DNA of 64,000 bases, from positions 65,410,001 through 65,474,000 of the forward strand of contig NC_082708.1 in NCBI RefSeq assembly GCF_030144855.1. Direction: 5' to 3'. The notes beneath the pieces are model-generated. The model made no database searches. It saw only the letters and a list, made by a program, of their open reading frames with translations, and was not told where the DNA came from. Source of the stretch: Hypanus sabinus (lineage: Eukaryota). Below are positions 2,881 through 8,800 of the stretch, piece after piece. The stretch's first letter is position 1. Each line of letters starts with the position of its first letter. The position numbers and the translations under genes were made by a program.

Positions 2881-5800
2881 GTAAATGAAATTAACGGGGA
2901 TAGGGGCGGGGAAGGGAAGCGCTTTACCACCAACTTTCCAAGAATGAGACTTTGGTTTAAAATGTATGACACCCGGACTTAGTCCCGGGGAGGCCTTGTG
3001 TGTGTGTGTGTGGTAGTTGGGGTGTAGGCGGGCAAAGAACGAGCAACCTCCAACTTACCCACCGATGATGCTCTCTGCTCTCCCTCGGATCTTCACTGTG
3101 AGTTTGATCTGGAGAAAAGAGTGGGTGGTAGAAGGGAGGGATTTTAAATCCATGACCCTGCCGTTATACATGGGAAGGGGATCTTCCAATAATGAAAATA
3201 AATTACCTATTTGAAAAAAAATCTCACCCAGTTCATGATCTGGGCTTCATTTCATTTAATTGTACAGCATGTTATTAACTGATAAGTACCGTGGTGTGGT
3301 GGCATCTTTTGCACAAATCTTGGTGTTGCTTCCATCTACTGTGCACACACTGAGACTACAAGCTATCATTCTTCAATTTGGTCCAAATAAAACCTAATCG
3401 TTTGACTTGGGTACGTCGTCATCAGACCAAGTCCGTTTGTTTCTGTGCGAAGAGGAACTTAAGAGAACTGCTAGTATGTTCGGCCCTGCACTGTTTGGCT
3501 CTAGCTAAATACGGTGGTAAAATGTCGATCAGGAACATACTATTTGCACGGCTTCTGTCATGGTGCCCTTTCTACTTGTTTTTGTCGGTTATGTGTCATT
3601 TACACGGATCCATTGTTTTCTGCGCTTTTAAGATGTCAAACAAGTGTACTCTGCCCAATAGAATCTATTACAATTCCTAAAGAATTGATGAATTGTACTT
3701 TTATACAAAGGAACCGAGGCTGCTGACAACGTACCCGTGTAAAAACTAAACAGCAAAACAGCCAGCTTCATTCATTATGATGATGTGGATCTTCATAAAT
3801 TGCCAATAATATAGAGGACTATAGGTATTTCATGCCTTTTATCGTTCCTTTAGGAGCTTTTTGCAATATGCCAATACACATTTTTTTAGACTTGGGTTTT
3901 TAATGATTTTTTTTATTGGTTTATAAGTACGATTTCTAAGTTTATACATAGCAATACTGATGGCTTGTTATTCAAGTACAAATTCTTCTGTATTCCTATG
4001 GCTAATGTTGAGCAACAGTAAAAAATTAATTCTTAATTCTTAAGTGCACATCTTGTGCTAACAAGATGTGACTTGCTTTAGTATCTGTTTTATTTTCGAA
4101 TTGGAAGCTAACTATTCTGTAGTCTTGTTTGGATGTTACAGTTAGTCATTGTAGAACCTTGAATTTTGCATTAGTGCTTTTAAGTATTTCTCTGCTATAT
4201 ACTATGCTATGTATTTACAGTCTTGGTGAGTTTCACTACATGATGACACAATGCAATTATAGAGAAACAAAAGTAAGTCTTTTTATAAATTACTGAAGCT
4301 TGGATCTGTAAGTTTATTTGTCACTGCTGTGAAGCATTCAGGTGCTGGGGTGGAGATATGTCTACCAAAGGAGGTGTAAGGGGCTTCCTCCATCTGCTAG
4401 CCTGCAGATCACCCATGGGCATGGTGTACTTGGCCACCTACCATGAATCAGGATCACATGAAGCCATGGGAGCAAGTGGTGCATATCACAAGTCCTGGTT
4501 ATGCGACCGCTGGCACTAGGCAAACAATTATTGATAATGGCTTGCGTCACCCCTCTTGTAAAGACATTGTCCAGAAGAAGGCAAAGATGGCAAGTCACTT
4601 CTGTTAAAAAATTTGTCAAGAACAATCATGGTCTAAAGACTATAATCACCCAATGTCATAGAACACAGCATATGATGATGATGATGAAATATTGATCACC
4701 TAACATAGCGTTTCACTATTTAGGAAACCAAATCCACCTTAAGTTGTATGGTCAGATGGAATGTTCATTATAAATTTTCTTTGGATTTATGGGTTTTGTT
4801 TTTGCCTATTGATTTAGTAGCAATTATCAAGTTCAGATATTATTGAAGGTTTTATTATGTGCTTCTACTTTGATGTAATGGGCTGACACTCCTGTGATGA
4901 TTTCTTTCTTTTAAGCTAACTTATGAAAGGCAGTTAAATATAACTGATGAAATAAGAAAACAATATAATGTATCTAGCTAGAAATATATCTTAACTATCC
5001 TTGGGGATCATTGGAATTCCTAATCATAGTCAAAGCATAGAAACAAGCCCTTTGGTTTACTGTCGTGCTGATTATCACCTTCCTGAATGGAAAATTCTCA
5101 ATAAATAGTCATGTTATTTGTTTGATTTTAAAAAGAATGTTTATTACAAGTGTGAGGTTTTTGCACTTTGGCAGGACAAACCAGAGTGGGAAGGGAACTG
5201 AAGTGTGGTAGCACAAAGGGATCAGGGAATAACTATCCATACAGTCAACCTTCACTAATCTGACTACCTGTAATCCAGTTCCTTCGATAATCCAGCATTG
5301 ATTTCAAATTTTCCGTGCAACTGTAATTTAAAATTTCCTGGGCCGCCATACCTATCTGCTGCGCATTGTTTTGGTTGCACTAGATCTGTTCACATGTTGG
5401 CACACTCTTGTAAGCACAGATAGGTGATTCCTGCATTTATTAATATCATTTGTGTGAGGCGCGGCAGCCCGGCACCCGCCAGTGGCGGGGGAGCTAGTGC
5501 GCTGGGTAGGTCCACCTTCTCGCCCACCCAGCCAGTGCTCCATTCTCTTCTGCCTACAACCTCAGATCAGACAAGGCGACCTGCTGAATTTAAGCATATT
5601 ACTAAGTGGAGGAAAATAAACTAACGAGGATTCCCTCAGTAACTGCGAGTGAAGAGGGAAGAGCCTAGTGGCGAATCCCCGGCTTCCTGGCGGTCGCGTG
5701 AAATGTGGCATATACAAGACCTCCTTTCTCCCGACTTCTGCTCACCTAGATGTGCTGCCACCAACATCAACAGTTTATGAAGAAACTGTTGTGCCATTTT

Positions 5801-8800
5801 CAGCACCAAGTTCCTGATGCTTCACTCATTTTTCAAAATGAAGATGTTGATGATCCTGGACAACTTCACACTTGCAGACATGTAACTTTGCCTGAAGGTA
5901 TATTAAACGTCTCACTTTAGAAGTGGAAGTGCTCAACTGTTCTGTATAAGTTAATTCCTGTACATTTACCTGTACTCTTTATTTTATCTGTGCCTGTACA
6001 GGATATTACTTTATTAAAATTTCACTTGCTACTCATTTAATATTTCTGTTTCATTATTATCTGACTTGTACTGATTTACATGATATTTTAAAGGCATGAT
6101 GAGGCGGTTAGCTATTGCGTAATGTGATCCTTCTGTAATTTGGTATTTTCACTAATCTGGCACTCCTCAGCTCCCAATGGTGCCGGATTATAGAAGGTCG
6201 ACCTGTAATTCCTTGGAAGTGGTGTTGCAGGTTCATTCCGATCATAATGTTGCTGGGACTTAAAGACTTCAGTTTTAGGAAAAGGTTGAATAAATTAGGA
6301 CTTTATTCCATGAAGCACAGGAGAAATAGGGAAATGCTGCAAAGTCAACCCTTTCACAACATATGCCGGTGTTACTAAATCTGATTCTGATCTTATAGAG
6401 GCATATAATGTTATGAAGGCTATAGATAGGGTAAATATATGCAGGTTTTTCCCCTTCCGGTTGGGTGAGACTAAACTAGAGGTCATAGGTTTAGAGTAAA
6501 AGATGAAATACTTGAGGGGAATCTCGGGAGGACATTCTTCACTCAGAGCATGATGTGAGTGGATTTGGGTTTGAATGCAACACTAAAGACAAATTTGGAT
6601 AGGTGCATGGATAAGAGGGGTATGGAGGGCTATGAGTGGGTAGTTGGGACTGGACAGAAAGTTAACTGGCACAGACTAGATTGTCTGACTGGTCTGTTTA
6701 TGTGATGTAGTGCTTTAAGGCTTAATGACTCTTGGTTGACCATAATGATTAAACAGAGCTTGCGCATGATGCTGAGTAAATATAGAAACTCAATGAAAAG
6801 CGTAACCTTGCATTTGTAAGATTATTTTTGTTTTGGTGTATGTGTTTTATTTTGTTCTTGTTCTGTAGGATGATGCTGCCAGTATAGAGAGTGGTACAAA
6901 TACAGAGAGACCGGACACGCCTACAAACACACCAAATGTACCTGGAAGGAAGAGCTGGGGCAAAGGAAAATGGAAATCCAAGAAATGCAAATATTCCTTT
7001 AAATGTGTCAACAGTCTTAAGGTTTGTGAGAACAAAAATGTCAATGTCTGATATTATAACTGGAATCATACAGGTCCAAATGCCCAATGATACTTTTGCA
7101 ATTGTATTCATTGTTTTCCTGTTATTTTTTAGTACACACATTTTCCTCCAGGTCAAAATGCTGGAACAAATCATTGCTTTGCATTATAGTACTAAGAAGG
7201 GTAGTGGTGTACAGTTGTCCCTCCTTATCCGCAAATTCAACCAACAACGAATCACGAAAACCCAGAAGTGCTCTTCCAGCACTTGTTGTTTGAGCATTTA
7301 CAGACTTTTTCTCTTGTCGTTATTCCCTAAACAATGCAGTATAACAACTATTTTACATTGTATTAGGTATTATAGGTAATCTAGAGATGATTTAGAGTAT
7401 ACGGGAGGATGTGCGTGGGTTATGGATCGGGATCGAAAAAATCGGAAGTTCTCTTTCTAAGTAAGTCAGAACAGGTACATCTGGTATTATTTAGCGTCAG
7501 TTAGTCAAACGTTTGCATTCATATATAGTATATATTTTACCTTTCTATGCATATAAAACACTTAAGAACGCATTTTTCAGTGCTGGGCTCAGGAATTTCC
7601 TGAGTTCGATCTAGTGGCAGATTGCTATCAAGTGCGCTCTCCACTGTGCCGGGTTGATGTGCAGGATCAAAAACCCAAAACCCAATAATTAAACCACTGC
7701 ATTGCTTAGTAATAATTGTAGCTTTCATCGGGGCACAGCCTTTCTCACTTTATCCTTTAAAATTGTTCCAATCGTTGACCGACATAGCCTAATGCTTTTC
7801 CAGTGACCGATGGCATTTCACCTCTTTCCTTTCGCTTTATTTCCACTTTATTTTCAATTGTTATTGGTGATTATTTTCATGAACAGAAGCATTGCTGATT
7901 CAGATCTCTACTGCTGGGTCCTAATGTCCACCGCACTGAGACAGGTTAAATAAGGTCTTGGGTTCTGCTGGGTCCTAAGGTCCACCGTATTGAGAGAGGT
8001 TGAATAAGGGACTTGAGCATCCGCGAGGGGTCCCGGAACCAATCCCTCGCGGATAAGGAGGGCTGACTGTACATAAAATATTGTGGACAGAATTTGATAC
8101 ATCACCTAACTAGTGATTATTAACTATGTAGCGCAGATTCCTTTTTACACCCCATGCTAGTACTTAATACTTATTTAAGAGCCTTCTCAAATCTATTCAG
8201 ATTTGAAGATCTTTTGATGTGGTCCCCCTCAGAATAATAAGTACTCTGCCCCTATGATACAGGTCATACTTTCTATTTCTAGGTAAGAGCTACAAGGGGG
8301 GGTGTTTAAAAGCTAAGGTGCAGTAGGCAAGCAACTGGGATGACTTAGGAGATGGAAAGTGAATGGGCAGATGTCACAGAGTACCCCTATGGCTGTTCCT
8401 CTCAATAACAAGGATCCTGCTTTGGATGATTTTGGGGGTGGATGGTGGGGGGGAGAAACAACCTACCACGAAATGCTGAAGCAGCTGGATCTCTGGCTGT
8501 TTGGCTCAGAAGGGAAGGAGGAAGAAGAGGAGAGGAGTGGTGATAAGGAACTCAGTAGTGGTGGAACAGATGTGATAATCTGTAGATGTGAAAAAGATTT
8601 ACTGGACAATTTTCCCTCTAATTTGTAATGACCAGTGTGCACAAAAAATTTTTGCCCAGTGACAACAACATGTGCATACTGATTTTTTTATATAGTGATA
8701 GTTATTTTAACTACTAGCAAAACACTGTTAATAAGAACTCCATTCTCCTCTGGGTTTGATTGCTCTCATCCATCTGCATCTCTCAAAACATACATAGCAG

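What the first reader, a model, noticed from the sequence alone, without database searches (positions are those of the whole stretch)
5242..6205. Tigger-type DNA transposon carrying an ITS2-28S rDNA fragment
Seen: a 964-bp element with TIRs and a TA duplication sits inside a CR1 fragment in EED intron 1. Its interior holds about 100 nt of GC-rich spacer running directly into about 180 nt of the 28S rRNA 5' end. I see no poly(A) tail or obvious TSD around the rDNA piece, and the retained spacer argues for capture from rDNA or pre-rRNA rather than mature rRNA. Inference: either gap-repair capture by the transposon, giving a Pack-type family that spreads rDNA fragments, or a later single insertion. 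The known rRNA-derived mobile elements I am aware of are SINEs, so a cut-and-paste carrier family would be unusual.
Basis: partly seen in the sequence, partly recalled or inferred. Interest (0 to 1): 0.75.

Follow-up and report, generated by a model that had tools for sequence, protein, structure and literature searches.

The report
Jumping-gene family carrying a 28S rDNA piece
This is one old, decayed copy of a roughly 1-kb cut-and-paste transposon family, present at hundreds of sites in this genome's relatives, whose interior carries the first ~170 bases of the 28S ribosomal RNA gene and probably the spacer before it; it is a neat case of a mobile element spreading host DNA, not a new mechanism, and this scan has met the family before.

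Summary
At 5242-6205 lies a 964-bp element with about 21-nt CAG... inverted ends and a TA on each side. It holds no coding remnant. Inside, Rfam places the 5' end of eukaryotic 28S rRNA (model positions 1 to about 170) at 5557 to about 5722, preceded by 100 nt of 69% G+C.

The element lies in EED intron 1, inside a CR1-like LINE remnant.

The flanks are single-copy. The element is covered by dozens of diverged contigs at every interior place, the 28S part included. Paralogous contigs (86-88% alike) cross the 28S/right-arm junction in three organisms. So the rDNA piece belongs to the family and is not a later insertion at this locus.

The left junction is less clean. Other copies join the left arm to the 28S-proximal spacer, but 5480-5526 of this copy is shared by only 2-6 contigs.

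ITS2 identity and the capture mechanism remain inferred.

The closest known kind is the animal Pack-TIR. The cargo and the copy number are unusual, the mechanism is not.

This scan found the same family at four other places of this genome (s1-228281, s1-191509, s1-191507, s1-188010).

The parts
5240..5241 (.). TA target-site duplication, left
   Evidence: it matches the TA at 6206-6207
5242..5262 (+). left terminal inverted repeat (CAGTCAACCTTCACTAATCTG)
   Evidence: (I3)
5281..5297 (+). subterminal second copy of the TIR core; it gives the best local match to the right end (15 of 17)
   Evidence: I2; 3 of 1000 shuffles reach the score
5242..5456 (+). left arm, non-coding and multi-copy
   Evidence: 29-85 contigs per place at 5298-5421; summed depth 10^3-10^4 against 8-22 in the flank; no Pfam match
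5457..5556 (+). G+C-rich spacer-like segment that runs straight into 28S position 1; probably the 3' end of ITS2. In this copy 5480-5526 is a minority variant
   Evidence: G+C 0.69; at 5496 only 2-6 contigs; 8-18 contigs show a different G+C-rich loose end before 5527; joints run from 5460/5477/5480 to 5527-5539
5557..5725 (+). 28S rRNA gene 5' end (Rfam LSU model positions 1 to about 170), decayed; it may extend to about 5745
   Evidence: table 3: the family-majority letters at 5607, 5666, 5669, 5671 and 5715 differ from this copy. At 5607 the majority letter is the one in the Rfam consensus. For 5666-5671 the match to vertebrate 28S rests on my memory
5746..6205 (+). right arm, non-coding and multi-copy
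   Evidence: (7-63 contigs per place at 5747-6144 in E, F and G; pieces 84-93% alike)
6148..6159 (+). exact 12-nt copy of the left TIR core (TTCACTAATCTG); it forms a hairpin with the right TIR
   Evidence: D8
6185..6205 (-). right terminal inverted repeat (CAGGTCGACCTTCTATAATCC on the - strand)
6206..6207 (.). TA target-site duplication, right
6208..6634 (+). host repeat into which the element inserted: a CR1-like LINE remnant of very high copy number. The left part is about 5100-5239
   Evidence: depth 10^4-10^5; ORF2 C-terminal-type motif, with a frameshift

Best explanation
The element at 5242-6205 is an old, immobile copy of a non-autonomous pogo/Tigger-like (Tc1/mariner superfamily) TIR transposon family. 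An autonomous relative's transposase would have recognised the CAG... ends and moved it in trans by cut-and-paste into TA sites.

The founder of the family acquired, once and at the DNA level, a stretch of about 270-290 bp of the host's 45S rDNA. That stretch spans the ITS2/28S boundary. The likely route is template switching during repair of a break inside the element or after its excision, which is the gap-filling or FoSTeST route proposed for animal Pack-TIRs.

The chimera then amplified to the order of hundreds of copies, so the rDNA piece travels as passive cargo. This copy landed in a CR1-like LINE remnant in EED intron 1 before the window's species split from at least two of the sampled relatives, and has decayed since.

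Shown: the element's anatomy, the 28S identity, the multi-copy status, a right junction shared with paralogous copies, and an orthologous insertion in relatives.

Inferred: the superfamily's transposase partner, ITS2 identity, a single capture event, the capture mechanism, and that the cargo has no function.
For: Anatomy: TA duplication, CAG... TIRs, a subterminal repeat of the TIR core and no protein-family remnant in the arms.

28S: 86.5 bits, starting at model position 1, with a contiguous upstream segment of 69% G+C.

Family:
- The flanks are at single-copy depth (22/11/8/9). The element's bins read 10^3-10^4.
- In organisms E, F and G, 27-42 contigs cover places in the 28S part and 7-70 cover places in the arms.
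- Records 11 (X16, 5635-5808), 19 (X19, 5559-5836), 30 and 31 (X5, 5626-5803 and 5650-5804) cross the 28S/right-arm junction at 85-88% identity. They are therefore paralogues, not the orthologous locus, whose flanks are 93-99% alike.
- Joints link 5460-5480 to 5527-5539 in X15, X16 and X19.
- Short derivatives (5291 or 5303 joined to 6116) occur in organism B, as is usual for MITE families.

Orthology: X19 record 17 (4862-5285) and records 8 and 23 (6109-6620, 6108-6388) bridge the element's ends into unique flank.

No poly(A) and no TSD lie around the cargo.

The family-majority letters differ from this copy at 5607, 5666, 5669, 5671 and 5715. At 5607 they restore the Rfam consensus, as expected if copies decayed independently from a genuine 28S sequence.

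Four earlier notes of this scan report the same structure elsewhere in this genome.
Against: All runs were Logan contigs, so no copy was seen end to end and no TSDs of other copies were seen. The tool itself warns that summed depth is not a copy number.

The left junction is not cleanly shared. Only 2-6 contigs match 5480-5526, and 8-18 contigs have another G+C-rich sequence before 5527. The spacer part therefore differs among copies, or this copy belongs to a minor variant.

No autonomous partner, no cargo-free progenitor and no rDNA unit of the species could be examined.

A word search with a right-arm ORF found nothing, so I hold no full paralogous copy.
Confidence: 0.8

Rival explanations
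1. A single secondary insertion. An rDNA fragment entered this one copy, or this one locus, after transposition, and the rest of the family lacks it.
For: No second copy lies in the window for comparison. Segment 5480-5526 is nearly private to this copy.
Against: Dozens of diverged contigs per run cover the 28S part. Paralogous contigs cross the right junction in three organisms. Four other loci with the same structure were noted in this genome.
Confidence: 0.03
2. RNA-level origin of the cargo. A piece of pre-rRNA, which still carries ITS2, was reverse-transcribed into the founder element by LINE machinery or by template switching of a reverse transcriptase, before the family amplified.
For: Pre-rRNA that contains the ITS2/28S boundary exists, so the retained spacer does not exclude RNA. 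CR1-like LINEs are very abundant here.
Against: There is no A-rich tail and no flanking direct repeat. The piece ends inside 28S near position 170-190, not at an RNA 3' end. The known rRNA-derived retro-elements (SINE28) keep the 3' end, a tail and TSDs (PMC4994717).
Confidence: 0.1
3. A composite element. Two separate MITE insertions flanking a stretch of rDNA were mobilised together through their outer ends.
For: The TIR core occurs twice near each end.
Against: No inward-facing TIR or TA lies at either cargo junction, about 5457 and about 5725-5745. The extra core copies are subterminal, not at the junctions.
Confidence: 0.04
4. The cargo is not the host's own rDNA. The chimera formed in another species and reached this lineage by horizontal transfer.
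For: Tc1/mariner elements transfer horizontally often (general knowledge). The species' rDNA could not be compared.
Against: The family-majority letters fit a vertebrate or fish-type 28S 5' end as far as I recall it, which is memory and not a test. The family is shared by at least four related organisms.
Confidence: 0.08

Closest known systems
Pack-TIR elements of animals (Tan et al. 2021, PMC8277862) and Pack-MULE / Pack-CACTA of plants
   Same: Non-TE host DNA of a few hundred bp sits between the two ends of a TIR transposon. The cargo is a fragment, not a working gene. The proposed origin is template switching during repair, and multicopy cases spread by transposition.
   Different: In that survey of 100 animal genomes the multicopy Pack-TIRs were rare and had a handful of copies. 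Here the depth ratio and contig counts point to the order of hundreds. The cargo is rDNA (ITS2/28S boundary), not genic or intergenic unique DNA. The paper's main text holds no occurrence of 'rRNA'.
Pokey / mPok (piggyBac) of Daphnia
   Same: A DNA transposon and its MITEs with rDNA-derived sequence inside. It is the only DNA transposon in Table 2 of the 2024 review (PMC10946416).
   Different: Pokey targets a site in 28S and carries IGS-derived repeats. This family is pogo/Tigger-like with TA targets, lies in ordinary introns and carries ITS2-28S.
SINE28 and other rRNA-derived SINEs
   Same: Dispersed copies of a fragment of the large-subunit rRNA.
   Different: SINE28 derives from the 3' end of mature 28S, has A- or T-rich tails and variable TSDs, and moves by LINE machinery (PMC4994717). 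Here the fragment is the 5' end plus spacer, without tail or TSD, inside TIRs.
Tigger/pogo non-autonomous elements (MER2-type MITEs)
   Same: TA duplication, TIRs that begin with CAG, no coding capacity. A second such element lies at 7212-8069.
   Different: Ordinary members are deletion derivatives of the autonomous element and carry no host rDNA.

Membership tests
Tc1/mariner superfamily, pogo/Tigger-like, non-autonomous | TA target-site duplication | tested here: met
   TA at 5240-5241 and at 6206-6207
Tc1/mariner superfamily, pogo/Tigger-like, non-autonomous | Terminal inverted repeats that begin with CAG, about 20-25 nt | tested here: met
   17 of 21 with one gap; I3 and I2. Similarity to named Tigger consensus ends rests on memory only
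Tc1/mariner superfamily, pogo/Tigger-like, non-autonomous | An autonomous partner that encodes a pogo-type DDE transposase and has matching ends | not testable with these tools
   No eukaryotic genome collection is on hand. No transposase remnant lies in the arms
Tc1/mariner superfamily, pogo/Tigger-like, non-autonomous | Dispersed multi-copy family with unrelated flanks | tested here: met
   single-copy flanks, 10^3-10^4 summed depth inside, dozens of diverged contigs, internal-deletion derivatives in X5
Pack-TIR (transposon with captured host DNA) | Non-TE host sequence between TIR-bearing arms, with an identifiable parental gene | tested here: met
   Rfam LSU_rRNA_eukarya, 86.5 bits, model positions 1 to about 170
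Pack-TIR (transposon with captured host DNA) | The same cargo at the same junctions in other copies (multicopy Pack-TIR) | tested here: inconclusive
   Right junction: crossed by paralogous contigs in three organisms. Left junction: only joints with an unknown or different middle
Pack-TIR (transposon with captured host DNA) | A cargo-free progenitor TE and microhomology at the breakpoints | not testable with these tools
   Needs the genome-wide family and the species' rDNA
rRNA-derived SINE (SINE28-like) | A-rich or simple-repeat tail, variable-length TSDs, derived from the RNA 3' end | tested here: not met
   No A or T run of 5 or more and no direct repeat of 5 nt or more around the piece. 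The piece is the 28S 5' end plus an upstream spacer
rDNA-targeting DNA transposon (Pokey-like) | Insertion at a specific site inside rDNA units | tested here: not met
   The element lies in EED intron 1, inside a LINE remnant. The window holds no other rRNA match

The most novel reading that the evidence does not exclude
The ITS2-28S cargo could act as a provenance stamp. If the spacer and the D1 region match the rDNA of a lineage other than the host's, the family records both the species in which the chimera formed and a horizontal transfer into this clade.

Alternatively, the cargo may have been kept because the rDNA boundary sequence helped the element amplify to an exceptional copy number for an animal Pack-TIR.
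Probability: 0.08. Interest if true: 0.6.

Novelty: new member of a known kind. Interest (0 to 1): 0.3.

Why it matters
It shows that a cut-and-paste transposon can scatter a piece of the rDNA unit over hundreds of sites in a vertebrate genome.

That has a practical side. Such copies will be annotated as LSU-rRNA pseudogenes, can mislead rDNA FISH, read mapping and ITS2/28S barcoding, and inflate counts of 'orphan rDNA'.

For transposon biology it would be an unusually high-copy animal Pack-TIR. The captured spacer evolves fast in rDNA, so it offers a way to date and place the capture event.

It does not reveal a new mechanism.

Tried and rejected
1. A second copy in the window: none. blastn with word size 7 on both arms and on the cargo gave only chance hits.

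2. Fetching paralogous copies through predicted proteins: the 56-aa right-arm ORF found no candidate. I ran no further search on it.

3. Coding remnants of a transposase in the arms: none at E up to 10 in Pfam.

4. A 15-nt inverted repeat that brackets the cargo (5413-5427 and 5742-5756; 13 of 15; 8 of 2000 shuffles reach it) looked like a hairpin that could have stalled replication. The family-majority letters at 5421 and 5747 lower it to 11 of 15, so I take it as chance.

5. tRNA or other RNA genes in the element: none. A weak lncRNA match (E = 0.1) was ignored.

6. Search of the scan's notes by sequence: blank.

7. Scans of the metagenome, prokaryote-genome and viral collections for other copies were not run. 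Those collections should hold next to no DNA of this animal, and I do not know which letters of this copy are private.

8. Literature: I found no description of a Tigger/pogo family with 28S cargo. Repbase and Dfam could not be consulted.

9. The host taxon was not determined.
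Full report
**What is there**

The stretch 5242-6205 (964 bp) is bounded by TA at 5240-5241 and TA at 6206-6207. It begins CAGTCAACCTTCACTAATCTG. On the other strand its far end reads CAGGTCGACCTTCTATAATCC. That is 17 of 21 with one gap. The repeat finder reports 17 nt at 82% at exactly the tips (I3).

The core of the end sequence occurs again subterminally on the left at 5281-5297. 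This copy is the best local match to the right end, and 3 of 1000 shuffles reach its score. The core also occurs as an exact 12-mer at 6148-6159 (D8).

A degenerate pattern made from the two ends hits only these two places in the 64-kb window, against 0.08 expected. Because the pattern was derived from the ends, this shows only that no other copy lies in the window. blastn confirms that.

Seven ORFs of the arms have no Pfam match even at E = 10, and no tRNA is present. The element is non-autonomous.

**The ribosomal piece**

Rfam finds one family above threshold in the whole window: LSU_rRNA_eukarya at 86.5 bits, against a gathering score of 50. With the permissive search the alignment starts at model position 1 at 5557 and is confident to about model position 170, near 5722. 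Beyond that the alignment is noise. By eye the decayed homology may run on to about 5745.

Directly upstream, 5457-5556 has 69% G+C against 37-40% in the arms. Its CpG observed/expected is 0.59 and that of the 28S part 0.79, against 0.14-0.22 in the flanks.

No 5.8S match and no other RNA family is present. Around the piece there is no A or T run of 5 or more and no direct repeat of 5 nt or more.

**Context**

An ORF at 2779-2982 carries the EED N-terminus (...[17 protein letters not shown]...). The next EED coding block (...[26 protein letters not shown]) ends near 7021, and later exons follow on the + strand. The motifs I searched for come from my memory of EED, and the matches are in the window. 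The element thus lies in EED intron 1, with the 28S piece in the sense of the gene.

The right flank translates, with a frameshift, to ...[17 protein letters not shown]... and ...[16 protein letters not shown].... I recognise this from memory as the C-terminal motif of CR1-clade ORF2. That flank is a very high-copy repeat. The label 'inside a CR1 fragment' is therefore reasonable, although no library could test it.

**Family or single event**

This was the decisive question. No run holds more than 35% of the sampled words of 4700-6700, so the source individual is not among the served runs. Seven related organisms hold parts of the stretch.

I laid the contigs of four runs (organisms E, F, G and B) on 4700-6700 at 80% likeness.

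- **Depth.** The flank bins up to about 5100 read 22, 11, 8 and 9, which is one contig each. Inside 5236-6240 the summed depth is mostly 10^3 to 10^4. The tool warns that this is not a copy number. As a rough proxy, the ratio points to the order of hundreds of copies.
- **Contig counts.** At single places inside the element, 7-70 different contigs per run in E, F and G carry the family-majority letter where this copy has a private change. In the 28S part the counts are 27-32 at 5607, 32-42 at 5666 and 31-37 at 5715, in the same range as in the arms. True rDNA would give only a few contigs, so these are dispersed paralogues.
- **Right junction.** Listed pieces cross the 28S/right-arm junction with far more than 31 letters on each side. 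They are X16 record 11 (5635-5808, 22 differences), X19 record 19 (5559-5836, 38 differences) and X5 records 30 and 31 (5626-5803 and 5650-5804, 24 and 23 differences). At 85-88% identity they cannot be the orthologous locus, whose flanks are 93-99% identical.
- **Private changes.** The majority letters at 5607, 5666, 5669, 5671 and 5715 differ from this copy. At 5607 the majority letter is the one in the Rfam consensus. For 5666-5671 the majority gives the string that I recall from vertebrate 28S, which is memory and not a test. This is what independent decay from a genuine 28S sequence predicts.

The cargo is therefore a property of the family.

**What is less clean**

The left side of the cargo differs among copies. 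At 5496 only 2-6 contigs per run match this copy. In 8-18 contigs per run the sequence before 5527 is a different, G+C- and CpG-rich stretch, with 79-87% agreement among them.

Single contigs in X15, X16 and X19 join 5460, 5477 or 5480 to 5527-5539, with unknown letters between. Other copies thus have the left arm followed by the 28S-proximal spacer in the same order. Their middle is shorter or different.

For the same reason 'ITS2' remains a probable reading, not a shown one. The segment is contiguous with 28S position 1, is G+C-rich here and in the other copies, and has no tail. It was not compared with the species' own rDNA.

**Age**

Pieces of other copies differ from this one by about 7-16%. 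The difference is larger in the G+C-rich cargo (11-15%) than in the A+T-rich right arm (7-11%), as CpG decay predicts (table 8; the table keeps the longest pieces, so the sample is biased).

Contigs of organism G bridge both ends of the element into unique flank (records 17 and 23), and a contig of organism E bridges the right end (record 8). In E and F the flank unitigs stop 25-27 nt inside the element, which is what a 31-mer graph does at a repeat boundary.

The insertion therefore predates the split from relatives whose flanks differ by about 1.6% and 3.5%. For organism B (about 6%) it is undetermined.

Organism B also has many short forms that join 5291 or 5303 to 6116. Its termini are ten or more times deeper than most of its interior. 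This is an ordinary MITE-type deletion derivative.

**How it most likely works**

A transposase from an autonomous pogo/Tigger-like element, which was not seen, would bind the repeated end motifs and move the element between TA sites. The rDNA is passive cargo.

A single capture in the founder is the simplest reading of a shared right junction. The DNA-level route, template switching during repair of a break in or after excision of the element, follows the models proposed for animal Pack-TIRs (PMC8277862). It fits the lack of tail and TSD and an end point inside 28S. It is still an inference.

Four rivals are scored in the report:
- an RNA-level origin from pre-rRNA;
- a composite of two MITEs, against which no inward TIR lies at the junctions;
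- a single secondary insertion, which contradicts;
- a foreign, horizontally acquired chimera, which was not testable.

**Comparison with what is known**

The 2024 review of rDNA-TE relations lists SINEs, Cassandra and Ajax TRIMs, SINE28 and one DNA transposon, Pokey/mPok with IGS-derived repeats, as TEs with rDNA-derived parts (PMC10946416). SINE28 derives from the 3' end of 28S and has tails and TSDs (PMC4994717).

Pack-TIRs were catalogued in 100 animal genomes. Most are single-copy, and the multicopy ones have few copies.

One paper reports that skates and rays have far more Tc1/mariner DNA than sharks (PMC12361510).

Five literature searches found no description of a Tigger-like family with ITS2-28S cargo. 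Repbase and Dfam could not be consulted, so an existing library entry cannot be excluded.

I file it as a new member of a known kind.

**Relation to earlier work of this scan**

Four other findings on other pieces of this genome describe the same structure (s1-228281, s1-191509, s1-191507, s1-188010). Three follow-ups reached the same verdict.

I treated these as leads. My conclusion rests.

This report adds three things: the variable middle of the spacer part, the short derivatives in organism B, and the rejection of the bracketing inverted repeat.

Noticed in passing
window 7212-8069: A second TA-flanked Tigger-like non-autonomous element lies in EED intron 2. Its ends are CAGTTGTCCCTCCTTATCCGC... 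and ...GCGGATAAGGAGGGCTGACTG, of the same broad TIR type as the finding (CAG, a C-rich core, TATCCG). ARAGORN finds no tRNA in it. It is already noted as s1-198083.
   Followed up: partly
window 6241-6634: An extremely high-copy repeat with summed contig depth of 10^4-10^5 in all four runs. Hundreds of contigs run on beyond 6634 with a shared sequence that this copy lacks, so the copy is truncated or interrupted at about 6634. Its translation carries a CR1-type ORF2 C-terminal motif with a frameshift.
   Followed up: partly
window 5291/5303 joined to 6116 (contigs of run X5, organism B): Short deletion derivatives of the family of about 140-150 bp, with ends only. In organism B they are ten or more times more abundant than most of the 1-kb form's interior. 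They are not prominent in organisms E, F and G.
   Followed up: no
window 5480-5526: This part of the spacer-like segment is shared by only 2-6 contigs per run. Most family copies have another G+C-rich sequence before 5527. It is either a minor subfamily or a private rearrangement.
   Followed up: partly
window 10035-10166: A run of 132 N (assembly gap or mask) in an EED intron. It was left untouched.
   Followed up: no
window 5682 joined to 5814: One contig each in X15 and X16 skips 131 nt across the 28S/right-arm junction, with TT between the two sides. This is a family copy with an internal deletion that is shared by two organisms.
   Followed up: no
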